Assembly: GCF_036365525.1 (NCBI RefSeq)
Contig: NC_090390.1
Location: forward strand, 86,146,252-86,210,251
Direction: 5' to 3'
Source of the DNA: Heterodontus francisci
Lineage: Eukaryota
Length of the DNA: 64,000 nt
Shown here: positions 2,475 through 61,689 of the stretch, in pieces
How the letters are laid out: the number at the start of each line of letters is the position of its first letter
Numbering within the stretch: the first letter of the stretch is position 1
Notes under the pieces: generated by a model
Databases searched by the model: none
Told to the model about the DNA's origin: nothing
What the model saw: the letters and a program-made list of their open reading frames with translations, nothing else
Position numbers and translations under genes: made by a program

Positions 2475-2667
2475 TAAAGGCCTGCTTGGGTCTGGAAAAA
2501 AAAACCCGACCCGAACCCAACAGAACCACATCGGGCCCGAGTCCTTCCGTTTTTTCCCGCACCCGACCTGAGCCCGAAAGCCGGACCCTGAAGAGCGACC
2601 CGACCTGACCTGACCTGAACCCAACACGTTGGGTCCCTTCGGGTTCGGGTCAGGTACTAGGCCTTTA
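2475..2667. mobile_element. hAT-type MITE
   Basis: TIR TAAAGGCCT.../...AGGCCTTTA. Degenerate 8-bp TSD atcctgag/atctagag. Internal CCCGA motifs. Same termini as 43688-43978. Confidence 0.75.
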
Positions 2668-3020
2668 ATCTAGAGTAGTTGAAGCAAACTGTAGTTTCCC
2701 TTCTCCACCTTAGTACAGAAAGCAGGACAAATCCAATCCAGCCAATTACTGCCCCATCAGTCTACTCTTAATCATCAGCAAAGTGATAGATGGCTGTTGA
2801 CAAGCGTCACTTGCTCAGCAATAACCTGCTCGCAAGTGCTCAGTTTGGATTCCCTCAGGACCATTTGGCTCCAGGCCTCATTATAGTCTTGGTTCAAACA
2901 TGGACAAAAGAGCTGAATTCCTGAGGTGAGAGTGAACTCAAGGCAGTTTGATGGAGTGGCACCAAGAGGCTCTTGTAAAATTAAAATCATAGAATGAGAG
3001 TATTGCTGAAAACAGACATT

Positions 3021-3056
3021 TTGTTGAAGCTTTTCATCTTGCACTCATCAGGACAA
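3021..3056 (-). ncRNA. Minimal hammerhead ribozyme motif in Penelope pLTR
   Basis: Minus strand reads ttgtcCTGATGAgtgcaagatGAAAagctTCaacaa, with a palindromic stem III. Confidence 0.65.
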
Positions 3057-4247
3057 TTTGCAAGAATACCAATGTAAAGGAAGCAACTAATTTATACTAT
3101 GAGAAGAGAGTGCTGATTGGTTGGCAAGTGGACTCTGGTAGAGGCATTTTCATGGAGAATGCACCAGTTTATGGTGACTGGTACTTAACTGTCAAGCTTT
3201 GTTTGAAATTTAAACCAGGCAGCTTGACTGGTCAAGGCATTGCCCTGAGGAATAAATTAACGAATGGCTGTCACTTATTTTGTTCAGCTGAAACAGGTGC
3301 AGTGTGTGTACATGATCTTTGTCTGCAAAGAACAGGGCCCTGTGTATTAATATATGTAGCTTCCAGTACGTGCAAATGTGCCACACTGCGAGCCCTACTG
3401 ACAAACTTGAATTGGTTGTCAGTGTAATTCTTGGCACACTGAGGATTTTTAGCAAATGTTGTCCAGTCACGGAATCACATCTAATGTTGGACACTGTTTT
3501 GAGTTTTCAAGCACAGGCAGGTTGGGTACGGTCTGTACCTTGCCCATCGCCAACAGCAGAAGGGACATGTTTGATATGATCTACCAGTCTTTGGGACATA
3601 CAACCTATATACCTTAGCATCTCACTGGCGTTGAAATTCATATGTATTACTCGTTTGTGTGATAGGCAGAATATCTTTTTGGGTTGCCGGCAGCATCCTG
3701 TTAGTGACAAACACCACATGTGTTGCTACTGCATAGTTGCAGCGTGAAACAGCTAGCTTCACCTGTTGCTCAAATCTTTGGTATGCATTGCCCTTTCAGG
3801 GTAATCTGAGGTAGACTGGGCACTTTTCAAGGCCGGAAATGACGGCCTTAGGCCCGTTCATAAGTTTACGCGATATACAGCGAGAAATGATCTGCTCAGG
3901 GTAGCCATTGTCACGCAGGATGCCTTTAATTTGCCCTATTTCAGCATCAAGCTTGCAAAGTGAGCAAATGACTTGGGCCCTATTTGAGGTTGCTGATAAT
4001 GCCAATCTTATGCTGGGTGGAATTATAAGAATCCCAATGCGTGTATTGACAAGTGAAGGTAGGCTTGTGATAGCAGATTTCACAACTAGTACCTCAAGGA
4101 CTTTCAAGGTGCTTGCAAAACTCAAAACGGTGCCTAACATTAGATGTGATTCCGTGATTGGACATTTGCTAAAAATCCTCAGTGTGCTAAGAATTACACT
4201 GACAACCAATTCAAGATTGTCAGTAGGGCTTGTAGTGTGGCACATTT

Positions 4248-6744
4248 CACGTCAGTTCTGTGCACCGATGGGGAAAAAGGGTTTCTCTGGAGAGTGCACT
4301 GAGAGTCATGATCGGAACATCATGGGTGACTCAGCTGTGCTGCGATGGCGTGAAAGGGACAAGAGGGCAATAGTGGTAAGGGATTCTATGGTTAGAGGAA
4401 CGGATAGGCATTTTTGTGGTCGCAGGCGTGATTCCAGGATGGTATGTTGCCTCCCTGGTGCAAGGGTCATGGATATCACCGAGCGGCTACAGAGTACTCT
4501 GGAGGGTGAGGGTGCACAGCTGGAGGTCATGGTCCACATTAGTACCAATGATATAGGTGGAAAGAGGGATGAGGTCCTGCAACAAGAATTTAGGGATCAA
4601 GGTAGCAGATTAAAAAGCAGGACCTTAAAGGTTGTAATCTCTGGGTTATTCCTGGTGCCACGTGCTAGTGAGTATAGTAATAGGAGGATAGAGCAGATGA
4701 ATGTGTGGCTGAAGAGCTGGTGCAGGAGGGAGGTCTTTAGTTTCCTGGACCACTGGGTCTGTTTCTGGCGAAGGTGGGACCTGTACAAGTTGGATGGGTT
4801 GCACCTGAACTGGAACAGGACCAACATCTTTGCTGGGAGGTTTGCTAGTGCTGTTGGGGGGCGGGGTGGTGGGGTGGTGGTTAAACTAATTTGGCAGGGG
4901 GATGGGATACAGAGTGGAGGTACAGTCGAGGGTGATGCACCGAGTCAGTGTGGAAGACAGAGCAAATATAGACCTGTTGAGGCACAAGCGAATAATGCAA
5001 GGCTGGATTGTATCCATTTTAACGCAAGGAGCCTTACTAGTAAGGCAGATTAATTGAGGGCGTTGATTAACACATGGGAATATGATATTGCTATCACAGA
5101 GACATGGTTGAGGGAAGGGCAGGACTGGCAGCTCAATATCCCAGGGTATAGAATCTTCAGACGTGATAGGGGAGAGTGTAAAAGAGGAGGTGGCATTGCA
5201 ATGTTGATCAAGTAGTCAATTACTGCAGTATGGAGCGATGATATCTTAGCAGGTTCCTCAAATGAGGCCATATGGGTAGAACTCAAAAACAAAAAGCGGG
5301 CAATCACTTGGCTGGGAGTGTACTACAGGCCTCCAAACAGTCAGGGAGAGATAGAGGAGCAGATATGTAGGAAAATCTCAGAGGTGTTAAAATAATGGGG
5401 TAATAATAGGGGATTTCAGCTTCCCCAATATTAGAGGGGATAGTATGGGTGCAAAAGGCTTAAAGGGGGCACAATTCTTAAAGTGCATTCAGGAGAGCTT
5501 TTTGAGCCAGCACATAGAAAGTCCTACAAGAGGAAGGGGCAGCACTGGATCTAATTCTAGGGAATAAAGCCGGACAAGTGGTAGAAGTGGCAGTGGGGGA
5601 GCATTTTGGGGATAGTGACCATAACTCGGTAAGATTTAAGGCAGTTATGGAAAAGGACAAAGAGGGACCGGATATAAAAGTACTGAGTTGGGGGAAGGCA
5701 TAATTCAAAACAGGATCTAGCCAAAGTGGACTGGGAGCAGCTTCTTGTAGGAAAGTCTACATCAGAGTGGGAGACATTCAGAAAGAAAATAGTGAGAGTT
5801 CAGGTCCAACATGTTCCTATAAAAGTGAAGGGTAGGACCAACAAGTCCAGGGAACCCTGGATGTCAAGGGATATAGAGGATTGGATAAGGGGAAAAAAAG
5901 GAGGCATATGGCAGATTCAGACGCTGAAAGCAGCAGAGGCACTAGAGGAGTATAGAAAGTATAGGGGGGTACTTTTAAAAAAAAAAAGTAATTAGGAGAG
6001 CGAAGAGGGGGGCATGAAAATACACTGGCAGGCAAGATAAAGGAAAATCCTAAGGCGTTTTATAAGTATATTAAGGGCAAGAGAATAGCCAGGGACAGAG
6101 TAGGGCCCATTAAGGTCCAAAGTGGCCATCTGTGTTTGCAGCTGGAGGACATAGGTGAGGCTTTAAATCATTGTTTTTCATCTGTGTTCACTATGGAGTA
6201 GAACGATGTAGGTGTAGAGATCAGGGAGGGGGATTGTAATATACTTGAACAAATTAGCATTGAAAGGGAGGAAGTATTCGCTGTTTTAGCGAGCTTAAAG
6301 GTGGATAAATCCCCAGGCCCAGATGAGATGTATCCCAGGCTGTTAGCTGAGGCAAGGGAGGAAATTGCAGGGGCTCTGACACAAATTTTCAAATCCTCTC
6401 TGGCCACAGGAGAGGTACCAGAGGACTGGAGGACAACGAATGTGGTACCATTGTTCAAGAAGGGTAGCAGGGATAAACCAGGTAATTACAAGCCAGTGAG
6501 TCCAACATCAGTGGTAGGGAAACTTTTTTTGAAAAAAAATTCTAAGGGACAGGATTAATCTCCACTTGGAAAGGCAGGGATTAATCAGTAATAAAAACAG
6601 AAAGTTCTGGAAAAACTCAGCCGGTCTGGTAGCATCTGTGGAGAGAGAAGCAGAGTTAACGTTTCAGGTCAGTGACCCTTCATCAGAACTGCAGTTCTGA
6701 AAGAGTCTGTTTCTGTGCTGTATAACTCTATGACTCTGACTCTG
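4248..6744 (+). mobile_element. CR1 LINE (ORF1 esterase, APE endonuclease, RT start; internal deletion; 3' tail at ~6706-6744), decayed
   Basis: DSMVRGTDR/CLPGARV/DGLHLN esterase motifs, KSPGPDEMYPRLL, and CR1 tail tgtataactctatgactct. Confidence 0.85.
6590..6705 (-). mobile_element. Short Penelope (Neptune-type) terminal module with hammerhead
   Basis: Homologous to 26335-26470. Minus strand reads agttCTGATGAagggtcactgacctGAAAcgTTaact. Confidence 0.75.
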
Positions 6745-11289: not shown

Positions 11290-14200
11290 TGGATTTTCAA
11301 AAGGCCTTTGATAAAGTCCCCCACGGGAGGTTAATTAGCAAAATTGAAGCACATGGAATAGGAGGTGATATACTGGCATGAATTAAGGATTGGTTAACAG
11401 GTAGAAAACAGGAATAAACGGGTCATTTTCGCGTTGGCAGGCTGTGACTAGTGGGGTATTGCAGGGATCAGTGCTTGAGCCCCAGCTGTTAACAATATAT
11501 ATCAATGATTTGGATGTAAGGACCAAATCTAGTATTTCCAAGTTTGCGGATGACACAACGAGGTGTTGTGAGGAAGATGCAAAGCGGCTTCAAGGGGATT
11601 TGGAAAGACTTGGTGAGTGTGCGAGAACGTGGCAGATGGAATATAATGTGGAAAATGTGAAGTTATCCACTTTGGTAGGAGGAACAGATGTGCAGAGTAT
11701 TTCTTAAATGTTAAGTGATTAGAAAGTGTAGACGTACAAAGGGACCTGGGTGTTCTTGTCAATAAGTCACTGAAAGCTGACATGCAGGTGCAGTGAGCAG
11801 TTAAGCAGGCTAATGATATGTTAGCCTTTATCGCAAGCGGATTTGAGTACAGGAGTGGTGAAGTCTTGCTTCAATTCTATAGGGGGCGGCACAGTGGCGC
11901 ATTGGTTAGCACCGCAGCCTCACAGCTTCAGTGACCCGGGTTCAGTTCTGGGTACTGCCTGTGCGGTGCTTGCAAGTTCTCCCTGTGACCGTGGGGGTTT
12001 CCGCCGGGTGCTCCGGTTTCCTCCCACAGCCAAAGACTTGCAGGTTGATAGGTAAATTGGCCATTGTAAATTGGCCCTAGTGTAGGTAGGTGGAAGGAGA
12101 ATGGTGGGGATGTGGTAGCGAATAGAACAAAGAAAATTACAGCACAGGAACAGGCCCTTCGGCCCTCCAAGCCTGCGCCGATCCAGATCCTCTATCTAAA
12201 CATGTCGCCTATTTTCTAAGGGTCTGTATCTCTTTGCTTCCTGCCCATTCATGTATCTGTCTAGATACATCTTAAAAGACGCTATCGTGCCCGCGTCTAC
12301 CACCTCTGCTGGCAATGCGTTCCAGGCACCCACCACCCTCTGCGTAAAGAACTTTCCACGCATATCCCTCCCTAAACTTTTCCCCTCTCTCTTTGAACTC
12401 GTGACCCCTAGTAATTGAATCCCCCACTCTGGGGGAAAAAGCTTCTTGCTATCCACCCTGTCACGATTTTGTACACCTCAATCAGGTCCCCCCTCAACCT
12501 CCGTCTTTCTAATGAAAATAATCCTAATCTACTCAACCTCTCTTCATAGCTAGCGCCCTCCATACCAGGCAACATCCTGGTGAACCTCCTCTGCACCCTC
12601 TCCAAAGCATCCACATCCTTTTGGTAATGTGGCGACCAGAACTGTACGCAGTATTCCAAATGTGGCCGAACCAAAGTCCTATACAACTGTAACATGACCT
12701 GCCAACTCTTGTACTCAATACCCCGTCCGATGAAGGAAAGCATGCCGTATGCCTTCTTGACCACTCTATTTACCTGCGTTGCCACCTTCAGGGAACAGTG
12801 GACCTGAACACCCAAATCTCTCTGGACATCAATTTTCCCCAGGACTTTTCCATTTACTGTATAGTTCACTCTTGAATTGGATCTTCCAAAATGCATCACC
12901 TCGCATTTGCCCTGATTGAACTCCATCTGCCATTTCTCTGCCCCACTCTCCAATCTCTCTATATTCTGCTGTATTCTCTGACAGTCCCCTTCACTATCTG
13001 CTACTCCACCAATCTTAGTGTCGTCTGCAAACTTGCTAATCAGACCACCTATACTTTCCTCCAAATCATTTATGTATATCACAAACAACAGTGGTCCCAG
13101 CACGGATCCCTGTGGAACACCACTGGTCACACGTCTCCATTTTGAGAAACTCCCTTCTGCTGCTACTCTCTGTCTCCTGTTGCCCAGCCAGTTCTTTATC
13201 CATCTAGCTAGTACACCTTGGACCCCATGCGACTTCACTTTCTCCATCAGCCTACCATGGGGAACCTTATCAAACACCTTACTGAAGTCCATGTATATGA
13301 CATCTACAGCCCTTCCCTCATCAATCAACTTTGTCACTTCCTCAAAGAATTCTATTAAGTTGGTAAGACATGACCTTCCCTGCACAAAACCATGTTGCCT
13401 ATCACTGATGAGCCCATTTTCTTCCAAATGGGAATAGATCCTATCCCTCAGTATCTTCTCCAGCAGCTTCCCTACCACTGACGTCAGGCTCACCGGTCTA
13501 TAATTACCTGGATTTTCCCTGCTACCCTTCTTAAACAAGGGGACAACATTAGCAATTCTCCAGTCCTCCGGGACCTCACCCATGTTTAAGGATGTTGCAA
13601 AGATATCTGTTAAGGCCCCAGCTATTTCCCCTCTCGCTTCCCTCAGTAACCTGGGATAGATCCCATCCGGACCTGGGGACTTGTCCACCTTAATGCCTTT
13701 TAGAATACCCAACACTTCCTCCCTCCTTATGCCGACTTGACCTAGAGTAATCAAACATCTGTCCCTAACCTCAACATCCGTCATGTCCCTCTCCTCGGTG
13801 AATACCGATGCAAAGTACTCGTTTAGAATCTCACCCATTTTCTCTGACTCCACGCATAACTTTACTCCTTTGTCCTTGAGTGGGCCAATCCTTTCTCTAG
13901 TTACCCTCTTGCTCCTTATATATGAATAAAAGGCTTTGGGATTTTCCTTAACCCTGTTTGCTAAAGATATTTCATGACCCCTTTTAGCCCTCTTAATTCC
14001 TCGTTTCAGATTGGTCCTACATTCCCGATATTCTTTCAAAGCTTCGTCTTTCTTCAGCCTCCTAGACCTTATGTATGCTTAATTAATGTAGGATTAGTAT
14101 AAATGGGTGGTTGTTGGTTGGTACAGACTCGGTGGGCCGAAGGGCCTGTTTCAGTGCTGCATCACTGTATGACTCTATGAAGGGGGAAGCCACTTAGGAC

Positions 14201-17789: not shown

Positions 17790-18645
17790 ATTGCCTGCCA
17801 AAGTATTACCCACCCGTTCCCTGAAACACACACAAATGAATTGTCTCCCATCCAAATAGTTGAAACCACTATGCAATGTCTCTTTCTAAGATGTACCCTC
17901 CTCACAGTAATGATGACTCCAGGGTGAGGGGCTACAGTCACAAAGGGAAACTTGAGAAGTTGGGAATTATTTTTTCCCTTGCTTGGGAAGATGAAAATTG
18001 TTCAGGCCTCCTTCTGCCTCATCCTCACTATCCCTTTCATCCTTCTCTGTCCCTATTACCTGACATAACTGTTGCTGCTTATCCTCCTCCCGCGATAATG
18101 TTTCAACATATTGATCTGGCACAGCCGATTCTTTTTCCGGCAATCTGGGGTGTCAATCAAATAATTTACTTTACCAAATCTCATGACCACTTCATATGGA
18201 TCACTGAATTGTACTTTAATCAGTTCCTGTAAAGGCAGTAATGCTAACACCTCATCCCCTGGTTGAAGTGTTCAGGTCTTAGCATGCTTGTCTGCCCATT
18301 TCTTCATGATTGTTTGGGAAGCTTTAAGGTGTTCCTGAGCCACTTTGCAAGCTATCGTGAGCCGTTCTCTGAACACGGATATATAATCTAGCACAGAAGA
18401 TTCATCCCTCTGTTCTAAAAACCTTTCTTTAATTAGTTTTAGAGGACCTCTTATGTCCATAAACTAATTCAGAAGGACTAAAACCGGTAGATTCATTAGA
18501 TGAATCCCTAATGGCAAACAAAAGAAAATTAGCCCTTTATCCCAATCATGGGGATATTCATGACAGTATGCCCTGATGGTACCCTTCTAAAGCTCCTGTG
18601 TCTTTGGGTGGTAAGCTAAAGACTTGAACTGTATTGTACCCAAAT

Positions 18646-20446
18646 TGGACGAACAGCCAACAAAATCGGAACTCAGTGATGCCATTGATTCTCTAGCCAG
18701 TGGAAAAGCCCCTCGGAAGGACGGCATTACCCCTGAAATAATTGAGTGCCAAGCCTGCGATACTCTCAGCACTCCATGAACTGCTTTGCCTGTGCTGGGA
18801 TGAGGGAGCAGTACCACAGGACATGCACAATGCCAATATCATCACCCTCTATAAGAACAAGGGTGACGGCGGTGACTGCAACAACTACCGTGGAATCTCC
18901 CTACTCAGCATAGTGGGGAAAGTCTTCGCTCGAGTCATTTGAAACAGACTCCAGAAGCTGGCTGAGCGTGTCTACCCTGAGGCACAGTGTGGCTTTCGAG
19001 CAGAGAGATTCACATTGACATGCTGTTCTCCCTTCGCCAGTTACAGGAGAAATGCAGCGAACAACAAATGCCCCTCTACCTTGCTTTCATAGATCTCGCC
19101 AAAGCCTTTGACCTCGTCAACAGACGTGGTCTCTTCAGACTACTAACAAAGATTGGATGTCCGCCAAAGCTACTAAGTATCATTGCCTCATTCCATGACA
19201 ATATGAAAGGCACAATTCAGCATAACGGTGCCTCATCAGACCCCTTTCCTATCCTCTGGCGTGAAACAAGGCTGTGTTCTCGCACCTACACTGTTTCGGA
19301 TCTTATTCTCCCTGCTGCTCTCACGTGTTCAAGTCTTGAGAAGAAGGAATTTTCCTCCACACAAGATCAGGTGGCAGGTTGTTCACCCTTGCCCGTCTTA
19401 GAGCGAAGACCAAAGTACGGAAGGTCCTCATCAGGGAACTCCTCTTTGCTGACTATGCTGCATTAACATACCACACAGAAGAGTGTCTGCAGAGACTCAG
19501 CGACAGGATTGCGGCTGCCTGCAACGAATTTGGCCTAACCATCAGCCTCAAGAAAGCGAACATCATGGGACAGGACGTCAGAAATGCTCCATCCGTCAAT
19601 ATCAGCGACCACGCTCTGGAAGTGGTTCAAGTGTTCACCTGCCTAGGCTCAACTATCACTAGTAACCTGTCTCTCGATGCAGAAATCAACAAGCGCATGG
19701 GAAAGGCTTCCACTGCTATGTCCAGACTGGCCAAGAGAGTGTGGGAAAATGGTGCACTGACACGGAACACAAAAGTCCGAGTGTATCAAGCCTGTGTCCT
19801 CAGTACCTTGCTCTATGGCAGCGAGGCCTGGACAATGTATGTCAGCCAAGAGCGATGTCTCAATTCATTCCATCTTTGCTGCCTCCGGTGAACCCTTGAC
19901 ATCAGGTGGCAGGACCGTATCTCCAACACAGACGTTCTCGAGGCGGCCAACATCCCCAGCATATACACCCTACTGAGCCAGCGGCGTTTGAGATGGCTTG
20001 GCCATGTGAGCCGCATGGAAGATGGCAGGATCCCCAAGGACACATTGTACAGCGAGCTCGCCACTGGTATCAGACCCACCAGCTGTCCATGTCTCCGCTT
20101 TAAAGACGTCTGCAAACGCGACATGAAGTCCGATGACATTGGTTAGAGGTCGTGGGAGTCAGTTGCCAGTGATTGCCAGAGCTGGCAGGCAGCCATAAAG
20201 GCGGGGCTAAAGCGTGGCGAGTCAAAGAGACTTAGCAGTTGGCAGGAAAAAAGACAGAAGCGCAAGGGGACAGCCAACTGTGTAACAGCCCCAGCAACCA
20301 ATTTTATCTGCAGCACCTGTGGAAGAGTCTGTCACTCTAGAATTGGCCTTTCTCGCCACTCCAGGCGCTGCTTCACAAACCACTGACCACCTCCAGGCGC
20401 TTACCCATTGTCTCGAGAGACAAGGAGGCCAAAGAAGAGAAGATGA
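18646..20446 (+). mobile_element. RTE-clade (BovB-like) LINE, 5'-truncated and frameshifted
   Basis: NYRGISLLSIVGK, AFIDLAKAFD, LLFADYAAL and LLYGSEAW motifs. Short purine-repeat tail (aagaagagaaga). Confidence 0.88.
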
Positions 20447-23400
20447 TATTGTGAATAGCTGGGGTCCTAGCACCGATCCCTGCGGTACCCCACTAGTCAC
20501 TGCCTGCCATTCAGAAAAAGACCTATTTATCCCTACTCTTTGTTTCCTGTCTGCCAACCAATTTTCTATCCATCGCAATACACTACCCCCAGTCCTGTGT
20601 GCTTTAATTTTACATGCTAATCTCTTATGTGGGACTTTGTCGAAAGCCTTCTGAAAGTCAAAATAAACCACATCCACTGGTTCCCCCTCATCGACTCTAC
20701 TAGTTACATCCTCGAAGAATTCTAGTAGATTTGTCGAGCATGATTTCCCTTTCATAAATCCATGCTGACTCTGTCCGGTTCTACCACTGTTCTCCAAGTG
20801 CTCTGCTATAAAATCTTTGATAACAGACTCTAGAATTTTCCCCACTACCGACATCAGGCTGACTGGTCTATAATTCCCTGCTTTCTCTCTACCTCCTTTT
20901 TTAAATAGTGGCTTTATGTTAGCTACCCTCCAATCTGTGGGAACTGTTCCAGAGTCTATAAAATCTTGGAAGATGACCACCAATGCATCCACTATTTCGA
21001 GGGCCACTTCCTTAAGTACTCTGGGATGCATACCATCAGGCCCTGGGGATTTATCGGCCTTCAATCCCATCAATTTCCCCAACACCATTTCTCTACTAAT
21101 ACTGATTTCTTTCAGTTCCTCTCTCTCGCTAAGCCCTGTGTTCCCCAACATTTCTGGTAGGATATTGGTGTCCTCCTTTGTGAAGACAGAACCAAAGTAT
21201 GCATTTAGTTGGTCAGCCATTTCTTTGTTCCCCATAATAAACTCCCCTGTTTCTGACTGTAAGGGACCTACATTTGTCTTCAATCTCTTTCTCCTCACAT
21301 ACCTGTAGAAACTTTTACAGTTCGTTTTTATGTTCCCCGCAAGCTTGCTCTCATACTCTATTTTCCCCTCCTTAATCAATCCTTTGCTGAATTCTAAACT
21401 GCTCCCAATCCTCAGGTCTGTTGTTTTTCCTGTCAAATTTATATGCCTCTTCCTTGGATCTAATGCTATCTCTAATTTCCCTTGTAAGCCATGGTTTGGC
21501 TACCTTTCCCATTTTATTTTTGCGCCAGATGGGATAAGCAATTGTTGCAGTTCATCCATGCGCTCTTTAAATGTTTGCCATTGCCTATCCACCGTCATCC
21601 CTTTAAGTAACGTTTCCCAATCCGTCATGGCCTTTGTAGTTTCCTTTCCAAAGATTCTGAATCAACTATGTCACTCTCCATGTTGATGAAGAATTCTATC
21701 ATATTATGGTCGCTCATCCCCAAGTGGTCTCGCACCACTAGATTGTCAATTATTCTCTCTCATTACACAATACCCAGTCTAGGATGGCCTGTTCTCTAGT
21801 TGGTTCCTCAACATATTGGTCCAGAAAACCATCCCGTATCCACTCCAAGAATTCCTCCTCTACGGTATTGTGACTAATTTGAATTGCCCAATCTATATGC
21901 AGATGAAAGTCACCCATAATTACAGATGTTCCTTTTTCGCATGCATCTCTAATTTCCTGTTTAATGCCATTCCCAACATCACTAAAGTTTGGGGGTCTAT
22001 ATATAACCCCCACTAACGTTTTTTGCCCATTAGTATTTCTCAGCTCTACCCATACAGATTCCACATCGTCAGAGCTAATATCTTTCCTCACTATTGCATT
22101 AATTTCCTCTTTAACCAGCAATGCAACTCCACCGCCTTTTGCTTTTTGTCTGTCCTTAAATACTGAATATCCCTGGATGTCCATTTCCCATCCCTGGTCA
22201 CCTTGCAGCCATGTCTCCGTAATCCCGACAATATCATACCCGTTTACTTCTAATTGCGTGATTACTTCATCCACTTTATTGCGAATGCTCCGCGCGTTAA
22301 GTCACAAAACCTTAAGGCTCGTCTTTTTAACATTACTTGTCCCCTTCCCACTATTTTTCACTGTGGCCCTGTTTTATTCTGGCCCTTGATTTCTCTGCCT
22401 ATCACTTTTCTTATTCCCCTTACTGTCTTTTGTTCTTGTCTTTGATCCCCCCTCCTCTGACTCCTTGCAAAAGTTCCCATCCCCCTGCCATTTTAGTTTA
22501 AACCCTCCCCAACCATTCTAGCAAATACTCCCCCTTGGACATCAGTCCCAGTCCTGCCCAGGTGTAACCTGTCCAGTTTGTACTGGTCCCACTTCCCCCA
22601 GAACCCAATGCCCCAGGAATCTAAAACCCTCCCCCTCACACCATCTCCAGCCACATATTCATCTGATATGTCCTGCTATTTCTACTCTGACTAGCACGTA
22701 ACACTGGTAGTAATCCTGAGATCACTACCTTTGAGCTCCTACTTTTCAACTTACTTCCTAGCTCCCTATATTCTGCTTTTCGGGCCTCATCCTTTTTTTC
22801 ACCTATATATTTTGTACCAATGTGTACCACAACCACTGGCTGTTTACCCTTCCCCTTCAGAATGTCCTTTAACCGCTCTGAGACATCCTTGACCCTAGCA
22901 CCAGGGAGGCAGCATACCATCCTGGAGTCTCTTTTGCTGCCACAGAAACGCCTATTCGCCTTGCAATTGAATCCCCTATAACTATTGCATTCCCACACTT
23001 CTAACTCCTCCCCAGTGGTGCAACAAATTAGGCTGTTGCTGCTTTCCCCTGGTCACCCATTCCCCTCCTGCCTGTGGGGTCTGAGCTTGCAGTGTGACCA
23101 CCTCTCTCTACATGCTATATCCACGATACACTCCACCTCGTGACTGCTCTACAGTGTCCCCAGCTGCCGCTCCAGCTCCGAAACCCAGGCTTCCAGGAGC
23201 TGCAGCTGGATACATTTCCTGCACACATGCTGGTCCCGGGCACTGGAAATGTTCCCAGCTTCCGACATGGAGCATAAGGAGCACACCACGGCTTTGAGCT
23301 CTCCTGCCATGACTTAACCCATTAAATTAAACCTTCTGGAAGATCTTAATGTCCAATAATATCAGTTACTCTAAGGCCCTTCGTCCCTGGTTTTCATTAC

Positions 23401-31700: not shown

Positions 31701-33767
31701 TTTAAAAAGATCATCTTTTGTGTGTCTATTTTTTTCTTCTAAGACCTTTGAATGCAGGCTGGAAGGGCTTGTGTGCGCAAAGTTCGCTGTCCCAAAATTG
31801 GCATGCTAGTAGCTAAATATATGCTGCTGATTTTTTCTGAATCTTATCCTGATAAGTGGCTCCAACAGTTGTGCCAGTTTATTAATGTGGATAAACTAAC
31901 CCAGTCCTTTGGGGGGGGGGGTCATGTTTGAAGAGAGGGACCCTGAATGAAAATGCTCAGAGGCATAAATTAAGTGAATATGAAGACTTGTCGTATGCTG
32001 AATCTATTCTAAGTTCCTTAGCCCAAGTTCCCCTGGTTAATTGCTTCTTTTGGGATATTATGTGAGTAAAGCTCAACTCCTTCACAGTTATTTTGGTTTG
32101 GCATCATTTATGGGAGTCGGGGAGATACAGCTGCCGAAGAATCTGGTGGTTGTCTTCTGTGTGAACTGAATTTGCCGCTGCAGGTGCCATTACTACGAAT
32201 TTGGGCTGGCTTAGTTTCAATTGAGGAGCAAAGTATTTCCTCCATAATTGGATTAGTCACTGGACTGGCCATTGAAATGATTCCTGAGCATTACCTCAAA
32301 TATTACCAGAGTAGACATTACTCTTGCCCTTTTATTGTGAATATTCCTCTGGTTGAAATGGGAATAATGTGACTTATGTGAATAATAAGTTGCAGAATAG
32401 TTGACGGACTATCAGATTGGGAGGCTTTCCCTGTCTGATGGGTGCCCTTCTTAAAGTAACTTGATATTTTTGAAGCTATGATGCAATTGATGGGGAAGAG
32501 AACCATAGAAAAGTTACGTAACAGAAAGAGGCCATTCTGTCCATTGTGTCTGTGCTGGCTGAAAAATCTGGTCGCCCAATCTAATCCCACCTTCCAGCAG
32601 CTGGTTACAGCACTTCAGGTGCAGGTCCATGTACCTTTTTAAATGAGGGTTTCTGCCTCCACCACCGATCTGGGCAGTGAATTCCAGATACCCACCACCC
32701 TCTGGATTTAGAAGTTTTTCCTCATGTCTCCTCTAATTCTTCTACCAATCACCTTAATTCTGTGCCCCTGGTAATTGACCTCTCTGCTAGGGGAAGCAGG
32801 TCCTACCTGTCTACTCTATCTAGACCCCTCATAATTTTGTACATCTCAATTAAGCACCCCTCAGCCTGCTCTGTTCTAAGGAAAACAGCCCTAGCCGATC
32901 CAGTCTTTCCTCATAGCTGCAACTTTCAAGCCCAGGCAACATTCTTGTAAATCTCCTCTGTACTCTCTCTCCAGAGCAAGTATGGTGTTCCTGTAATGTG
33001 GTGACCAGAACTGTATGCAATACTCCAGCTGTGGCCTAACCAGCGTTTTATACAGTTCCAGTATTACATCCCTGCTTTTGTATTCTATACCTCGACCAAT
33101 AAAGGAAAGTGTCTTCACCACATTATCTGTCCTGCCACCTTCAGGGACTTGGTGGACATGCACTCCAAGGTCTCTCACTTCCTCTACCCCTCTCAATATC
33201 CTCCCATTTATTGTGTATTCCCTTGCTTTGTTTGCCCTTCCCAAATGCATTACCTCACACATGTCCAGATTGAATTCCATTTACCACTTTCTCCCCACTC
33301 AACCAAACCATTGATATTCTGGAGTCTACAGCTATCCTGTTCAATATCAACTACACGACCAATTTTTGTGTCATCTGCAAATTTCCCTATCATGCCACCC
33401 ACATTTAAGTCCAAATCAATATATACTACAAACCTTAAATCCATGCTGACTGTCCCTGATTAATCCATGCTTTTCTAAGTGACCGTTATCCTATCAGAAT
33501 TGATTCTAATAATCTGCCCACCACCGAGATCAGACTGACCGGCCTATAATTATTTGGCCTATACCTCGCACCCTTTTTAAACAATGGTACAATGTTTGCA
33601 GACCTCCAATCCTCTCGGACCTTGCCTGTATCTATTGAGGATTTGAAAATGATCCTCAGAGCATCTGCTATTTCCTCCCTGGCTTCCTTTAACAGCCTGG
33701 GATACAATCCAACTGCCCCTGGTGATTTATTCACTTTCAAGGATCTCAGACCCTCTAGTTCATCTTT

Positions 33768-34110
33768 TGTTTAGTTTAGAGATACAGCACTGAAACAGGC
33801 CCTTCGGCCCACCGTGTCTGTGCCGACCATCAACCAACAATTTATACTAATCCTACACGAATCCCATATTCCAATAACATCCCCACCGGTCCCTATATAT
33901 TTCCCTACCACCTACCTGTACTAGGGGCAATTTATAATGGCCAATTAACCTACCAACCTGCAAGTCTTTGGCATGTGGGAGGAAACCGGAGCACCCGGAG
34001 GAAACCCACGCAGACACAGGGAGAACTTGCAAACTCCGCACAGGCAGTACCCAGAATCGAACCCGGGTCCCAGGCGCTGTGAGGCTGCAGTGCTAACCAC
34101 TGTGCCGCCC
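33768..34110 (-). mobile_element. HE1/V-SINE-type SINE
   Basis: Head, V-domain-like body and tail as in the other copies. Confidence 0.85.
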
Positions 34111-54041: not shown

Positions 54042-54233
54042 CTTTCAACAGGAAATTCAGGAGTCAATAAACTTCATCCAAAATATATGCTGTGCTCGTG
54101 AAACTGCGAGATCTCTGTTAGAGATGTTAAAATCTACTCAGTCTCGAGTCACGTGCATCAAGGTTAGAGCAAAGCTCCCTCTACACTGTCCCATCAAACA
54201 CTCCCAGGACAGGTACAGCACAGGGTTAGATAC

Positions 54234-54432
54234 GCATGCGGTGTCCGCCGGTACGCTTGAGGCCTTCCACGACCGGTGGGCACCGCAGGGACTGGAGTGC
54301 ATCGTCGACGCAGAGAATGGCATTTTAATTTGAGTTTTTTGTTTATTTATCTGGTTTTAATAAAGTTATTTTAAAACTGTAAATATGTATATAAAGGGGG
54401 CCTGAGGAATAAAGGCCACCTTAAAAAAAAAA
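54234..54432 (+). mobile_element. 5'-truncated Tx1 LINE 3' end inside the minisatellite
   Basis: Matches 59297-59516 (HAVSAGTLEAFHD...ENGILI*). Ends in an A tail. Confidence 0.88.
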
Positions 54433-55941
54433 CGGGGGGAAAAAAAAGAAAACAAAAGGAAAAAAAAAAGAAAAAACTGGGGTTAGATACAGTAAAGCTC
54501 CCTCTACACTGTCCCATCAAACACTCCCAGGACAGGTACAGCACGGGGTTAGATACAAAGTAAAGCTCCCTCTACACTGTCCCCATCAAACACTCCCAGG
54601 ACAGGTACAGCACAGGGTTAGATACAAAGTAAAGCTCCCTCTACACTGTCCCCATCAAACACTCCCAGAACAGGTACAGCACGTGGGTTAGATACAAAGT
54701 AAAACTCCCTCTACACTGTCTCATCAAACACTCCCAGGACAGGTACAGCACAGGGTTAGATACAGAGTAAAGCTCCCTCTACACTGTCCCATCAAACACT
54801 CCCAGGACAGGTACAGCACGGGGGTTAGATACAAAGTAAAACTCCCTCTACACTGTCTCATCAAACACTCCCAGGATAGGTACAGCACAGGGTTAGATAC
54901 AAAGTAAAGCTCCCTCTACACTGTCCCATCAAACACTCCCAGAACAGGTACAGCACGGGGGTTAGATACAAAGTAAAACTCCCTCTACACTGTCTCATCA
55001 AACACTCCCAGGATAGGTACAGCACAGGGTTAGATACAAAGTAAAGCTCCCTCTACACTGTCCCATCAAACACTCCCAGGACAGGTACAGCACGGGGGTT
55101 AGATACAAAGTAAAGCTCCCTCTACACTGTCACCATCAAACACTCCCAGGACAGGTACAGCACGGGGGTTAGATACAGAGCAAAGCTCCCTCTACACTGT
55201 CCCCCATCAAACACTCCCAGGGACAGGTACAGAAAAGAAAAAAAAAAGAAAAGAAAAAAAAACAGGGATTAGATACAGAGTAAAGCTCCCAAAAAAGAAA
55301 AAAAAACTGGGGTTAGATGCAGAGTAAAGCTCCCTCTACACTGTCCCCATCAAACACTCCCAGGACAGGTACAGCACGGGGGTTAGATACAAAGTAAAGC
55401 TCCCTCTACACTGTCCCCATCAAACACTCCCAGGACAGGTACAGCACGGGGTTAGATACAGAGTAAAGCTCCCTCTACACTGTCCCCATCAAACACTCCC
55501 AGGACAGGTACAGCACGGGGGTTAGATACAAAGTAAAGCTCCCTCTACACTGTCCCATCAAACACTCCCAGGAGAGGTACAGCACGGGGTTAGATACAGA
55601 GTAAAGCTCCCTCTACACTGTCCCATCAAACACTCCCAGGAGAGGTACAGCACGGGGTTAGATACAGAGTAAAGCTCCCTCTACACTGTCCCCATCAAAC
55701 ACTCTCAGGACAGGTACAGCACGGGGGTTAGATACAAAGTAAAGCTCCCTCTACACTGTCTCATCAAACACTCTCAGGACAGGTACAACACGGGGGTTAG
55801 ATACAAAGTAAAGCTCCCTCTACACTGTCTCATCAAACACTCCCAGGACAGGTATAGCACGGGGTTTAAATACAAAGTAAAGCTCCCTCTACACTGCCCC
55901 CATCAAACACTCTCAGGACAGGTACAGCACGGGGGTTAGAT

Positions 55942-56096
55942 CAGCGCCGAGAATGGCATTTTAATTTGAGTTTTTTGTTTATTTATCTGGTTTTAATAAA
56001 GTTATTTTAAAAATATAAGTGTGTATATAAAGGGGGCCTGAGGAATAAAGGCCCCCTCGACAAAAAAAAAGAGAAAAAAAATGAAAAAAAAAAAAA
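55942..56096 (+). mobile_element. 5'-truncated Tx1 LINE 3' end with a 12-bp TSD
   Basis: TSD cgggggttagat at 55930-55941 and 56097-56108. Matches the 3' UTR of the long copy. Confidence 0.88.
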
Positions 56097-56160
56097 CGGG
56101 GGTTAGATAAAAGCTCCCTCTACACTGTCTCATCAAACACTCCCAGGACAGGTACAGCAC

Positions 56161-59100
56161 AGTATAGGATTGGCTGGAGAGTTTGGAGCACTTCCTGCGT
56201 GCAATTAGGTGAAACAGCTGCATCTAAGCAGGCTGTGGAAGCTTCAACTGGAGAGGAGAGTGGAGAGAGCAACAACTTACAACTTCAACTGTGGAACTGT
56301 TTCTATTTTGTGACAACAAAGACAGCCTACAAGTTATTTTGGAGAGGTGGGTGTTGGAGCACCAGAGCACTGTTTGGTGTTTGGACTGTTGGGGGAGGGA
56401 GGAGGCGCTTGAAGATCCAGGGGTGGGGCTGCCAAATTCTATAGGGAGCTCCTGTACTTGCTCATGTTGACCTTCCATCTTGCACAAAGGGGGCTCACTC
56501 CCCACCCCAACTGTGTGGCTTGAGACGGCTGGAGCTGCCTGGCTGAAGAAAGTCTTTATACAACAGGAAGAAAAGGGGAGAACCGGGCGGCTCCAGCCGA
56601 CCCGGACGAACCTCCCCTGACTGGAAGACTGGACTGTGGACTCGGCAGTAAGGTACTCCAACCACCGATCATACAGCAACATCCTCGCAGCCTTCCTCTC
56701 CCTTCCACCACTTGGCCACCTATCCTCTCTTCTTTTCCTTTCCAACCACATCCTCCTCTACTCCCACCCCTCCACCATCATATTGCATAATTTAAGAACA
56801 AAACTGTTTGTTTTGTTTCTGAGGGATGGGCGTGGCTCTTCGACCCCCTGGCAAGCCCCTCTTCACAGGTGGCAGGGCCTTCTTGCACGTACAGTGCGTT
56901 GTTCTCTCCGGATCCGTCCAGCGAGGACCCGCAGTGTTTTGTGGGAGGACCTGCCGTAGGTCAGCCCGGAGGGCGCCGAATGCTTGGAGGCTCTGCTCAC
57001 GTTGGCGGAGCTGACCAACACCCTCCACCAGTTCTCGAGGGGCAAATCCCCAGGGCTGGACGGGCTGACCGTGGAGTTCCTCAGGGCATTCTGGGATGTC
57101 CTGGGGGACGATTACACGCAGGTCCTGGGGGAAAGCCTGGCGACCGGGGAGATACCCATCTCGTGGCTCAGGGCAGTCATCGTCCTGCTGCCAAAGAGGG
57201 GCGATCTCCACCTGCTTAAAAACTGGCGTCCGGTCTCCCTCCTCAGCATGGGTTATAAGATCTTTGCCCGGGTTATGTCTACCCGCCTGGGCTCCGTGCT
57301 GGCCCACATGATCCACCCCGACCAGTCTTACACGGTCCCAGGCCGGTCCATCCAGGACAACAGTCACCTTGTCCGGGATCTGATCCATATTTCCCAGAGG
57401 ACTGGTCAGTCGGTTGCCTTTCTCTCCCTCTATCAGGAGAAGGCGTTCGACAGGGTGGATCACGAATACGTTTTCGGGACTCTGCGCGCTTTCGGACACG
57501 GGCTGCATTTTGTGGCCCGGGTCCGACTTTTATACGCTGCCGCAGAGTGTCTGCTCAAAGTTAACGGATCTTTGACGGCGCCCCTTCGCTTTGGGAGAGG
57601 AGTGCGTCAGGGATGCCCCATGTCCGGCCAATTGTACACCATCTGCGTGGAGCTGTTACTGTGCCTGCTTCGCAGGAGGTTGACGGGATTGACTCTGCGC
57701 GAGCCGGCCATGCGGGTCATCCTCTCGGCTTATGCCGGAGATGTGCTCCTCACGGTCACAGATCCCGTTGACTTGCGGAGGATGTGCGACTGCCAGCAGA
57801 CCTTTTCTGCCGCGTCCTTCACGAGGATCAATTGGGAGAAATGTTACGGACTCCTGGTGGGTCAGTGGCGGGTGGACTCCCTGCCGGAGGAGTTGACACC
57901 TTTTGCGTGGAGCACCACACACCTCCTCTATATGGGAGTCTACCTTAGCCCCGCTGAGGAAGCCTGGCTGGCAAACTGGCAGGAGTTGGAGGCGAAAGTC
58001 ACCACTCGGCTGGGGCGCTGGACAGGACTGCTCCGAGTGCTTTCCTACAGGGGCCGAGCCCGGGTCATAAACCAACTGGTGGCCTCGTTAGTGTGATACC
58101 GGTTGGTCACTTCGGCCCCGCCCCCTGCATTCGCTACCAAGATCCAGCAGAAACTCGTCGATTTCTTCTGGGGCAAGAGGAAACACTGGGTCTCTGCTGC
58201 GGTCCTGAGTCTCCTGATCAAGAAGGGCGGCCAGTCACTGGTGTCCGTCCGCACCCAGGCTGCGACTCTCCGCCTTCGGACCCTGCAGAGATACCTGTAC
58301 GTCGAGCGTCCTCCCAGATGGTGTGCGCAGGCGACGTATTTTTTCCATCAGTATCACTGCCTTCAAGACAACACGCAGCTCCCGGCGGAGTCCGTTAGCC
58401 ACGCCTCGCTGAGGGAGTTGCCTGTCTTTTACCGGGATCTATTCCGAGTCTGGAACATGGTCGCCTCCAGTCAGGGCGCTCCCCCGCCGGCAGAGGAGAG
58501 AGCCTCGGCTGTCCGGGCGGCCAGCTCTGCAGACAGACCGACGGGCGGAGGAGTAGCCGAAGCCCCTGGGACGCCCCTCACTGTGATTGACGAGGGGGCT
58601 TGGGAGTGCAGAGCGCTCCCAGCCGAGCTGAGCCCCGCTCAGCCGGAGTTGCTCATCGGACCCAGGCCCCGAAAACCTCCTCGGGAGCTGGTCCCGCACA
58701 ATCCGAGCCGCCTCTCGGAAATACCCTCTGTGCCATTCCAATCGGTGCGGAGGGGTTTCCTGTACGGGCTGCTCCTGCACACTCTCCATTTCCTCGCCCT
58801 CGTCAGCCGGCCGGACACGCCCTGGCGGTCCGCGTTGCCATCTGGCGGTGAGGGGAAACCCCGATGGAGGTCTCTCTACGGGGGAGTCCTCCCCCTTTAC
58901 ATTGGGGACCTGGGGTGGAGGGTGTTGCACAGGGCAGTCCCGTGCAATAGACTTTTAAGCAGGTTCACAGACTCCCACGTCGCTGTACTTTCTGTGGCCT
59001 GGACAAGTCCGTGTTCCATGTATATATGGAGTGTGCGAGGTTGCAGCCCCTATTTGAGTATCTGAAGGGGCTGCTCCTCAAGTTCTAGCTGCACTTCAGC

Positions 59101-59516
59101 TCCACGCTCCTGATCTTTGGGCACCCGGTGCGGAGGGGCGTGGGCCAGGAGGAGGATCTCCTCGTCGGTCTGCTCCTGGGCCTGGCCAAGGTGGCAATTC
59201 ACAGGTCCAGGCTGCGGGCCGTCGGGAGAGTCCGTCCTCCCCGATTGCCTGCCCCTCTTCCGCGGTTATGTTCGCGCCCGGGCATCCCTGGAGGAGCATG
59301 CGGTGTCCGCCGGTACGCTTGAGGACTTCCACGACCACAGGGACTGGAGTGCATTGTCGACGCCGAGAATGGAATTTTAATTGGAGTTTTTTGTCTTTAA
59401 TAATTTTAAAAATATAAATATGAATATAAAGGGGGTCTGAGGAATAAAGGCCCCCTCGACATAAAATATATAAAAGGGGCCTGGGGTATAAAGACCACCT
59501 TACAAATAAAAAAAAA
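56161..59516 (+). mobile_element. Tx1-clade (L1 group) non-LTR retrotransposon: putative 5' UTR, RT, CCHC finger and 3' UTR; endonuclease missing; disrupted
   Basis: KSPGLDGLTVEF, KNWRPVSLL, QEKAFDRVDH, GVRQGCPMSG, SAYAGD (normally AYADD), LSYRGR, DLGWRVLH, and CTFC-x7-H-x4-C at ~58984-59034. Confidence 0.9.
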
Positions 59517-59804
59517 CGGGGTTAGATACAGAGTAAAGCTCCCTCAACACTGTCCCATCAAACACTCCCAGGGCAGGTACAGGGTGGGTTTGTTATGGAT
59601 ACTTTGCTCAAACAATATATTTTAGTCCCAACTTCAGAAGATTTCCCGTACTGCACTAATTACAGAGGTTGCAGCAACCAACAGACGCTAACAGACCATC
59701 CAGTCAGTGTGGAGCTGTGCCCCCTCCCTCGCCTCATCACTGGCAAACCTGACATGCCTCTGATGACCTGTTCATCTTGGATACACCAGACCTGGAGCGA
59801 AAGT

Positions 59805-60574: not shown

Positions 60575-61625
60575 GCTCATCCCATTATCAGTCCTCCGAC
60601 ACCGGATTACAGCTCACCGCTCACTCCACCTCTCCGACACTGAATTGTTAATCATCCCTCGCTCCACTTCTCCGACACTGGACTATTGCTCATCCCTCGC
60701 TCCACCTCTCCGACACCGGATTATTGCTCATCCCTCGCTCCACCTCTCCGACACCGGATTATTGCTCATCCCTCGCTCCACCTCTCCGACACTGATTACT
60801 GCTCATTTCTCGCTCTACTCTGCCACTGGATTATTGCTCATCCCTCGCTCCACCTCTCCGACACTGGACTATTGCTCATCCCTCACTCCACCTCTCCGAC
60901 ACTGGACTATTGCTCATCCCTCGCTCCACCTCTCCGACACTGGATTATTGCTCATCCCTCGCTCCACCTCTCCGACACTGGACGATTGCTCATCCCTCGC
61001 TCCACCTCTCCGTCACTGGATTATTGCTCATCCCTCGCTCCACCTCTCCGACACTGGACTATTGCTCATCCCTCGCTCCACCTCTCCGACACTGGACTAT
61101 TGCTCATCCCTCGCTCCACCTCTCCGTCACTGGATTATTGCTCATCCCTCGCTCCACCTCTCCGACACTGGACTATTGCTCATCCCTCGCTCCACCTCTC
61201 CGACACTGGACGATTGCTCATCCCTCGCTCCACCTCTCCGTCACTGGATTATTGCTCATCCCTCGCTCCACCTCTCCAACACTGGACAATTGCTTATCCC
61301 TTGCTCCTCCTCTCCGTCACTGGATTACTGTTCATCCCTCACTCCAATCCGACACTGGATTATTGCTCATCTCTCGCTACACCTCTCCGACACTGGATTA
61401 TTGCTCATCCCTTGCTCCACCTCTCCGCCACTGATTACTGCTCATCCCTCGCTCCACCTCTCCGTCACTGGATTATTGCTCATCCCTCGCTCCACCTCTC
61501 CAACACTGGATTACTGTTCATCCCTCACTCCAATCCGACACTGGATTATTGCTCATCCCTTGCTCCATCTCTCCGACACTGGACTATTGCTCATCCCTTG
61601 CTCCACCTCTCCAACACTGGATTAT
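60575..61625. repeat. 38-bp minisatellite (ccgacactggattattgctcatccctcgctccacctct), about 27 units
   Basis: Direct tandem periodicity. Confidence 0.95.
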
Positions 61626-61689
61626 TTGCTTGTTTGCACTGGAGTGCTGACTTGGGTTGCATTAGAATGTTAAAGTGGAAGTTTGGTGA

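What the first reader, a model, noticed from the sequence alone, without database searches (positions are those of the whole stretch)
54161..59585. Tx1 retrotransposon that repeatedly targets one nucleotide of a 69-bp minisatellite (candidate new sequence-specific family)
Seen: six A-rich 3' junctions end at 54432, 54476, 55262, 55306, 56096 and 59516. Each is followed by the same position of the repeat unit, ...CAGCA^C(A/G/T)GGG(G)TTAGATAC (at 54433 only a cgggggg remnant follows). All have the same orientation. Three carry recognisable Tx1 sequence, and I saw no Tx1 elsewhere in 64 kb. Known: Tx1-clade families are often target-specific (Tx1L in Tx1D, Keno in U2 snRNA, Dewa in tRNA spacers, Mutsu in 5S, Kibi/Koshi in microsatellites). 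Inference: this family's APE endonuclease recognises this minisatellite. I do not recall a described Tx1 family with this target, but could not search.
Basis: partly seen in the sequence, partly recalled or inferred. Interest (0 to 1): 0.88.

Follow-up and report, generated by a model that had tools for sequence, protein, structure and literature searches.

The report
Satellite-targeting Tx1-like retrotransposon in a shark
A dead copy and several stubs of an L1/Tx1-type jumping gene all sit at one exact spot of a 69-bp tandem repeat in a shark genome, which fits the site-specific insertion already known for the Tx1 group, so this is a real but fairly ordinary new example.

Summary
All six A-rich 3' junctions (54432, 54476, 55262, 55306, 56096, 59516) are followed by C(N)GGG(G)TTAGATAC, the same phase of a 68-70-bp repeat, all on the + strand. 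Three carry the same retrotransposon 3' end. Those three differ in 5' truncation point, indels and target-site duplication (13, 12 and about 3 bp), so they are separate insertions. Two bare A-tract junctions (54476, 55306) may be one event copied within the array.

The long copy (56164-59516) is dead and lacks the endonuclease. It holds only ORF2 residues about 400-1240 (RT plus CCHC knuckle) behind an unexplained 620-bp 5' segment. Reads from public runs show that the family and the satellite are both highly repeated, and that about 1,550 reads carry the empty site.

Unchecked first-reader notes on at least ten other pieces of this genome report the same association.

Closest named relatives are turtle and teleost "Tx1" proteins. 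Kojima 2015 already lists satellites among known Tx1 targets and describes tandem insertions sandwiching a duplication. Verdict: a probable new member of a known kind, of moderate interest.

The parts
54161..54233 (+). Left edge of the 69-bp satellite. The last 13 nt (54221-54233, CAGGGTTAGATAC) are the upstream copy of the target-site duplication of fragment A.
54234..54432 (+). Fragment A: the last ~190 nt of the element (end of ORF2 region, 3' UTR, hairpin 54394-54422) plus an A10 tail. It is 5'-truncated at the position matching 59296 of the long copy.
54433..54439 (+). CGGGGGG, a 7-nt remnant of the target start between two A tails.
54440..54476 (+). Bare A-rich tract (37 nt, scattered G/C) followed by CTGGGGTTAGATAC. 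It is either a tail-only insertion or a duplicate of the tract at 55291-55306.
54477..55234 (+). Eleven satellite units (one short, the rest 68-72 nt), in part alternating CAGGG and CGGGGG variants (137-nt dimer).
55235..55262 (+). Bare A-rich tract following GGTACAG and followed by CAGGGATTAGATAC.
55263..55290 (+). 28-nt partial unit (CAGGGATTAGATACAGAGTAAAGCTCCC) sandwiched between two A tracts. It is the upstream copy of a 28-nt target-site duplication; 3 of 28 positions differ from the downstream copy.
   Evidence: In run X1, 24 contigs turn A-rich after the same +28 position (table 7, place 59544).
55291..55306 (+). Bare A-rich tract (16 nt) followed by CTGGGGTTAGATGC.
55307..55943 (+). 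Nine satellite units. The last 12-14 nt (CGGGGGTTAGAT) are the upstream duplication copy of fragment B.
55944..56096 (+). Fragment B: the last ~118 nt of the 3' UTR (hairpin 56031-56057 with AATAAA in its loop) plus a 35-nt A-rich tail. Its truncation point differs from that of fragment A.
56097..56162 (+). One satellite unit between fragment B and the long copy. It ends GCACAG, which is the upstream flank of the long copy.
56164..56790 (+). Unexplained 5' segment of the long insert. It has no ORF2 homology, no Pfam or Rfam match and no snRNA head. It is repeated in the genome at roughly 1/3 to 1/10 of the RT depth and is nearly absent from organism C.
56786..59229 (+). Broken ORF2 remnant matching residues ~400-1240 of ~1300-aa APE-RT-CCHC proteins. 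The Pfam RVT_1 match lies at about 57191-57913. There are frameshifts near 56928 and 58970 and in-frame stops at 58094-58096 and 59086-59088.
58984..59037 (+). CX2CX7HX4C zinc knuckle (CTFCGLDKSVFHVYMEC) at the ORF2 C-terminus.
   Evidence: aligned to the C-terminus of P0017/P0161
59230..59516 (+). 3' UTR with hairpin 59430-59456 (9-bp stem, 9-nt loop holding AATAAA), a degenerate second copy of the hairpin module, and the tail ACAAATAAAAAAAAA.
59517..59582 (+). Last satellite unit. It starts CGGGGTTAGATAC, in phase with the unit that ends at 56162. Unique DNA follows.
   Evidence: empty-site joints 56157-56161 to 59516-59520

Best explanation
An abundant L1/Tx1-type non-LTR retrotransposon family of this shark inserts by target-primed reverse transcription at one position of a 69-bp satellite. 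The bottom strand is nicked opposite GGTACAGCA^CGGGGTTAGATAC, and cDNA synthesis starts from the poly(A) tail. That tail is added about 12 nt after an AATAAA sitting in the loop of a conserved 3' hairpin. The second-strand cut varies, giving duplications of about 3, 7, 12, 13 and 28 nt, and most copies are 5'-truncated, some down to the tail alone. Each insertion leaves an intact copy of the target sequence, so the site can be hit again. This produces tails that sandwich a short piece of satellite. Shown: the anatomy, the separate origin of the three element-bearing insertions, and the abundance of element, satellite and empty sites. Inferred: that an APE endonuclease of the family reads the sequence (mostly the part 3' of the nick), and that most genomic copies sit in this satellite.
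For: Six tails share one phase and one orientation. The three Tx1-bearing copies start at different element positions, differ by 10-nt, 17-nt and hairpin-module indels, and have different duplication lengths built of satellite sequence. The flanks of the 3.35-kb insert are contiguous in unit phase, and about 1,550 raw reads of run X21 join 56157-56161 directly to 59516-59520, the empty site. Depth in the ORF is about 600-800 in X21, against 2,000-6,000 for the satellite. The nick site is G/C-rich, not the T-rich site of unspecific L1-type nicking. One tail-only insertion follows an earlier tail (A10-CGGGGGG-A37-CTGGGG), so native upstream sequence seems dispensable. Relatives of ~1300 aa carry Exo_endo_phos + RVT_1 + zf-RVT. 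A 44%-identical teleost cluster is named 'transposon TX1 149 kDa protein' by NCBI, while human L1 ORF2p scores only 117 bits. Cartilaginous fish are reported to have Tx1 but no full L1 (PMC8455134). Tx1 families are typically target-specific, with satellites among listed targets, and tandem insertions sandwiching a duplication are described (PMC4494074). As leads only: first-reader notes on at least ten other pieces of this genome describe the same association.
Against: No census of flanks across the genome was possible. In one search the listed loose ends are swamped by satellite reads, so the fraction of copies outside the satellite is unknown. No endonuclease sequence of this family was seen. 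Two of the six junctions may be one event duplicated within the array. The primer end left by the nick (...CCCCG-3') cannot pair with poly(A), so the priming step is not explained by the simple model. Tx1 clade placement lacks a reference phylogeny.
Confidence: 0.75

Rival explanations
1. Specificity comes mainly from the RNA, not from endonuclease recognition. Copies are co-transcribed with the satellite, and read-through RNA carrying CGGGGTTAGATAC... pairs with the nicked target and fixes the junction, as proposed for R2/R1-type elements. The paired tails would then be single events carrying a short 3' transduction: tail, 7-28 nt of satellite, second poly(A).
For: The nicked end ...CCCCG cannot pair with poly(A) but would pair with read-through RNA. 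The 28-nt sandwiched piece ends 7 nt after an AGTAAA hexamer in the unit, a possible polyadenylation signal. In run X7, guessed to be RNA and from the same sample as the DNA run X1, satellite depth exceeds element depth about 150-fold, against 2-4-fold in X1. Kojima 2015 discusses transcription from the flanking target.
Against: X7 is only guessed to be RNA, and contigs give no strand. The 7-nt sandwich (CGGGGGG) holds no polyadenylation signal. Tx1L endonuclease is reported to be target-specific by itself (Christensen et al. 2000, cited). This is a variant of the best explanation rather than a true alternative.
Confidence: 0.2
2. One or two chance insertions were multiplied by unequal crossing-over or gene conversion within the array. 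On this reading the recurrence reflects satellite dynamics and the family has no intrinsic target preference.
For: Junctions 54476 and 55306 share a CTGGGG variant found in no other unit, and their downstream blocks are the best-matching pair (96.0% against a median of 93.6%). Satellites do homogenise in blocks (137-nt dimer).
Against: The three element-bearing copies have different 5' ends, different duplication lengths and several indels. Block identity is barely above background. All Tx1 sequence in the 64 kb lies in the 3% that is satellite. The nick site is not the A/T-rich kind that an unspecific L1-type nuclease prefers.
Confidence: 0.07
3. The 69-bp repeat is part of the element itself, either 5' monomers like those of mouse L1 or a 3' terminal repeat, and not an independent target.
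For: The long copy is preceded and followed by units, and element and satellite co-occur in organisms A and C.
Against: Short 5'-truncated copies are flanked on both sides by units in continuous phase with duplications. About 1,550 reads show units joined without any element, and satellite depth is several-fold that of the element. The array ends in unique DNA at both sides.
Confidence: 0.03

Closest known systems
Tx1-clade target-specific non-LTR retrotransposons: Tx1L in the piggyBac element Tx1D (Xenopus), Tx1-Mar in Mariner-N4_AMi (crocodilians), Keno in U2, Kibi/Koshi in microsatellites, and Tx1 families marked 'Sat' in Kojima 2015 Fig. 3
   Same: Relatives have an APE-RT-CCHC ORF2. The element has an A-rich tail, inserts in one orientation at a fixed position of a multicopy repeat, and gives variable duplications. 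Repeated hits at the same site leave tandem inserts that sandwich a duplication (PMC4494074).
   Different: The target here is a 69-bp tandem repeat of a shark. I could not find out which satellites the published 'Sat' families use, or whether this family or its satellite is in Repbase/Dfam. No snRNA-derived head is present. The endonuclease of this family was not seen.
Sea-turtle and other turtle Tx1-like ORF2 fragments (Caretta, Natator, Lepidochelys, Eretmochelys, Chelydra, Terrapene)
   Same: They are the closest proteins in the databases, at 55-64% identity over the RT. Some carry Exo_endo_phos beside RVT_1.
   Different: They come from another vertebrate class, are unnamed gene models, and their insertion sites were not examined. 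Their dominance may only reflect unmasked turtle annotations.
Human LINE-1 ORF2p (solved structures 8C8J, 8SXT)
   Same: It is the best solved relative of the RT (E 5e-33). Both have the same CX2CX7HX4C knuckle type and poly(A)-primed TPRT.
   Different: The score is much lower than for Tx1-named proteins (117 against 332 bits). L1 nicks loosely at T-rich sites, whereas here the junction is fixed in a G/C-rich motif.
R1 / TRAS / SART (APE-type site-specific LINEs of insects)
   Same: An APE-type element hits one nucleotide of a tandem repeat (rDNA or telomeric repeats). The bottom-strand site is constant and the second-strand site varies.
   Different: They belong to a different clade (R1), a different host group and different targets. 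This is a functional analogy only.

Membership tests
Non-LTR (LINE) retrotransposon, L1/Tx1 group | Reverse transcriptase of the LINE type | tested here: met
   Pfam RVT_1 at 6e-30. There are 60,552 relatives, and the best full-length ones are ~1300 aa. PDB best hit is L1 ORF2p at 5e-33, ahead of R2 at 4e-22.
Non-LTR (LINE) retrotransposon, L1/Tx1 group | C-terminal CCHC zinc knuckle in ORF2 | tested here: met
   CTFCGLDKSVFHVYMEC at 58984-59037, aligned to the C-terminus of P0017/P0161.
Non-LTR (LINE) retrotransposon, L1/Tx1 group | N-terminal apurinic-like endonuclease | tested here: not met
   It is absent from every copy in this window: homology starts at ORF2 residue ~400 and the 5' ORFs have no Pfam hit. 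It is present in relatives P0010, P0016, P0017 and P0188, so the family probably has it, but this was not shown.
Non-LTR (LINE) retrotransposon, L1/Tx1 group | A-rich tail, 5' truncation, target-site duplications (TPRT hallmarks) | tested here: met
Tx1 clade (Repbase/RTclass1 sense) | RT groups with Xenopus Tx1L and other Tx1 references rather than with L1 in a phylogeny | not testable with these tools
   No Repbase/RTclass1 reference set was available. Indirect support: a 44%-identical cluster is named 'transposon TX1 149 kDa protein' by NCBI; the score is 332 bits against 117 bits for human L1; and sharks are reported to have Tx1 but no full L1.
Tx1 clade (Repbase/RTclass1 sense) | Target preference: one sequence type in more than 20% of flanks (criterion of Kojima 2015) | tested here: inconclusive
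   In the window, 3 of 3 element ends and 3 tail-only inserts meet it. No genome-wide count could be obtained.

The most novel reading that the evidence does not exclude
The element reads almost only the sequence 3' of its nick (CGGGGTTAGATAC...). Every insertion would then regenerate a usable target and the array would fill with stacked copies and tail-only inserts. The satellite, which looks heavily represented in a probable RNA run, would supply the promoter and perhaps a second polyadenylation site. Element and satellite would then form a co-evolving pair conserved across shark species, a vertebrate counterpart of R2 in rDNA living in a non-genic satellite.
Probability: 0.2. Interest if true: 0.55.

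Novelty: new member of a known kind. Interest (0 to 1): 0.35.

Why it matters
Site-specific LINEs show how a mobile element can multiply to thousands of copies without hitting genes, and their endonucleases are candidates for safe-harbour integration tools. A shark family aimed at one nucleotide of an abundant 69-bp satellite would add a clean, high-copy natural data set for studying how APE-type nucleases read DNA: many independent junctions, variable second-strand cuts and repeat hits. It would also extend known Tx1 target diversity to cartilaginous fish. It does not change the current picture of the Tx1 clade.

Tried and rejected
2. Exact-pattern scans for the 3' hairpin motif and the satellite unit in metagenome, prokaryote-genome and viral contigs: 0 hits. 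This was expected, as those collections hold no shark DNA.
3. A protein search with the minus-strand ORF that spans satellite, tail and 3' UTR, hoping to catch junction-spanning ORFs from other loci: no candidates.
4. Read laying gave abundance and empty sites. The listed loose ends and joints are dominated by satellite reads, so the share of element ends with other flanks could not be read off.
5. Rfam on 54100-59700: nothing, so there is no snRNA or tRNA head on this copy.
6. Pfam on ORFs of the 5' segment 56164-56790, and a look-up of that segment in earlier findings: nothing.
7. ESM Atlas: only generic RT clusters.
8. Full-text search for the satellite sequence in papers: no hit.
9. Segmental duplication as the source of all the junctions: rejected for the three element-bearing copies, kept as possible for 54476/55306.
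Full report
**What is in the sequence**

The stretch 54161-59582 is one array of a 68-72-nt tandem repeat. TRF reports a 69-nt period, 21 copies and 88% matches, and my parse gives about 25 units. The array is interrupted by inserts that are all on the + strand.

Cutting every unit after GGTACAGCA shows that each insert's A-rich 3' end abuts the first base of a unit:

| Tail ends at | Followed by |
|---|---|
| 54432 | CGGGGGG |
| 54476 | CTGGGGTTAGATAC |
| 55262 | CAGGGATTAGATAC |
| 55306 | CTGGGGTTAGATGC |
| 56096 | CGGGGGTTAGATA |
| 59516 | CGGGGTTAGATAC |

Neither the unit nor the element occurs anywhere else in the 64 kb. The other RT-like stretches in the window are only 20-30% identical to Tx1-type queries and belong to other LINE kinds.

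**The inserts**

Three inserts carry the same 3' region:
- Fragment A: 54234-54432.
- Fragment B: 55944-56096.
- The 3.35-kb long copy: 56164-59516.

They are not copies of one event, for three reasons.
- They start at different element positions. A starts at the equivalent of 59296 and B at about 59360, while the long copy runs far upstream.
- They differ by a 10-nt indel, a 17-nt indel and a duplicated hairpin module.
- Their target-site duplications differ: CAGGGTTAGATAC (13 nt) for A, CGGGGGTTAGAT (12 nt) for B, and about 3 nt (CAG/CGG) for the long copy.

The three remaining junctions belong to bare A-rich tracts: 54440-54476, 55235-55262 and 55291-55306. The tract at 55291 has a 28-nt duplication, with 55263-55290 as the upstream copy.

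Junctions 54476 and 55306 share a CTGGGG start that no other unit has. Their downstream five-unit blocks are the best-matching pair in the array, at 96.0% against a median of 93.6%. They may therefore be one event copied by array dynamics, which makes five rather than six independent events a fair count.

**What the long copy is**

Only part of it is retrotransposon coding sequence. tblastn with ~1300-aa relatives aligns ORF2 residues ~400-1240 to 56786/56927-59229. Within that:
- A Pfam RVT_1 domain (E 6e-30).
- A CX2CX7HX4C knuckle at 58984-59037.
- Frameshifts near 56928 and 58970, and stops at 58094 and 59086.

The endonuclease and the first ~400 residues are missing.

The first 620 nt (56164-56790) match nothing in Pfam, Rfam or the earlier findings. 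Because the flanks of the whole 3.35-kb insert are contiguous in unit phase, this segment came in with the element. It could be the 5' UTR of an internally deleted variant, or a 5' chimera made by template switching. I could not decide between these.

In raw reads this segment has 1/3 to 1/10 of the RT depth, and it is almost absent from organism C.

**3' end**

A 9-bp stem with a 9-nt loop lies just before the tail in all three copies. Its folding energy is -19.4 and -16.7 kcal/mol in the two intact versions, with z-scores of -3.6 and -3.2.

The loop holds AATAAA, and the tail starts about 12 nt after it. This fits ordinary polyadenylation of a Pol II transcript. The hairpin is a candidate recognition site for the element's own protein; this is inference.

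**Evidence beyond the window**

Read laying on 56100-59640 shows the following.
- Raw reads of a DNA run of the same species (X21) cover the ORF at about 600-800x and the satellite flanks at 2,000-6,000x. Both are therefore highly repeated.
- About 1,550 X21 reads join 56157-56161 directly to 59516-59520. This is the empty site, and it proves that the two flanks are one continuous unit boundary elsewhere in the genome.
- Most reads are 90-99% like this copy, and many of this copy's differences are private to it, so it is an ordinary decayed member of the family.
- Element and satellite are also present in another species (X14, organism C).
- In 24 contigs of X1 the unit turns A-rich right after its position +28. 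That is the same second-strand position as the 28-nt duplication in the window.
- In X7, a run guessed to be RNA from the same sample as X1, the satellite exceeds the element about 150-fold, against 2-4-fold in DNA. This hints that the satellite is transcribed, but it is unproven.

The output could not give the share of element 3' ends that have other flanks, because the listed loose ends are all satellite reads.

Five collection scans found nothing. A junction-spanning ORF query found no candidates.

First-reader notes on at least ten other pieces of this genome describe Tx1 copies at one nucleotide of a 67-72-bp repeat. They are unchecked and I count them only as leads. The scan has thus flagged this same system repeatedly on other DNA of this genome.

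**Kinship**

- The best full-length relatives are ~1300 aa and carry Exo_endo_phos + RVT_1 + zf-RVT.
- The closest named proteins are unnamed gene models of sea turtles and other turtles, at 55-64% identity.
- A teleost cluster at 44% identity is named 'transposon TX1 uncharacterized 149 kDa protein' by NCBI.
- Human L1 ORF2p is the best solved structure but scores far lower.

Follow-up notes of this scan call the genome a horn shark. The whale-shark genome paper states that cartilaginous fish have Tx1 L1-like repeats but no full L1 (PMC8455134).

Tx1 membership is therefore likely, at about 0.85. I had no reference set to test it with a phylogeny.

**Mechanism**

The pattern is the classic signature of an APE-type site-specific LINE:
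- The tail-flank junction is constant.
- The 5' junction varies.
- Duplications range from 3 to 28 nt.
- Truncation goes down to the bare tail.

In other words, the bottom-strand nick is fixed and the second-strand cut is loose. The site (GCA^CGGGG) is G/C-rich, unlike the T-rich sites of unspecific L1 nicking.

One tail-only insert sits directly behind an earlier tail (A10-CGGGGGG-A37-CTGGGG...). This suggests that the sequence 3' of the nick carries most of the recognition.

The primer end (...CCCCG-3') cannot pair with poly(A). Either priming needs no pairing, or read-through RNA carrying satellite sequence helps. I keep the second possibility as a rival or variant, at 0.2.

**Comparison with what is known**

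Kojima 2015 (PMC4494074) summarises Tx1 targets: Tx1D, Mariner-N4_AMi, Harbinger, LTR elements, U2, U5, 5S and microsatellites. The Fig. 3 legend also lists 'Sat, satellites'. The paper describes tandem insertions sandwiching a duplication, and it sets more than 20% of flanks as the criterion for specificity.

The kind is therefore known. What may be new is this family and its 69-bp target in a shark. I found no paper containing the satellite sequence and could not query Repbase or Dfam.

**Verdict**

The novelty is modest: a probable new member of a known kind.

**Limits on what I did**

The only human item used is the name and score of a PDB protein hit.

Noticed in passing
window 56164-56790: A 620-nt segment at the 5' end of the long insert has no ORF2 homology, no Pfam or Rfam match and no other copy in the window. 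It is nevertheless repeated in the genome, at X21 depth 50-250 against 600-800 for the RT, and is nearly absent from organism C. It could be the 5' UTR of an internally deleted, endonuclease-less variant or a template-switch chimera.
   Followed up: partly
window 56031-56057, 59430-59456, 54394-54422: A conserved 9-bp stem / 9-nt loop hairpin with AATAAA in the loop lies about 5 nt before the A tail. The long copy has a second, degenerate copy of the module at 59462-59502.
   Followed up: partly
window 56100-56163 and 59517-59582 (run X7): In a run guessed to be RNA from the same sample as the DNA run, the 69-bp satellite is about 150 times deeper than the element, against 2-4 times in DNA. 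The satellite may be strongly transcribed.
   Followed up: no
proteins P0001 and P0002 (Lepidochelys olivacea gene models): These turtle gene models contain up to 18 tandem repeats of a 57-aa piece of the RT (matching window 57701-57871). A fragment of a related element seems to have become a tandem repeat in sea turtles.
   Followed up: no
window 12650-14075 (-), 20408-21379 (-), 18636-19247 (+), 33495-33863 (-), 6043-6543 (+): Other LINE reverse-transcriptase remnants lie here, 20-43% identical to Tx1-type queries in short stretches. They are from different clades and are not associated with the satellite.
   Followed up: no
window 60594-61626: A separate 38-nt tandem repeat (27.5 copies) lies 1 kb downstream of the array.
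   Followed up: no
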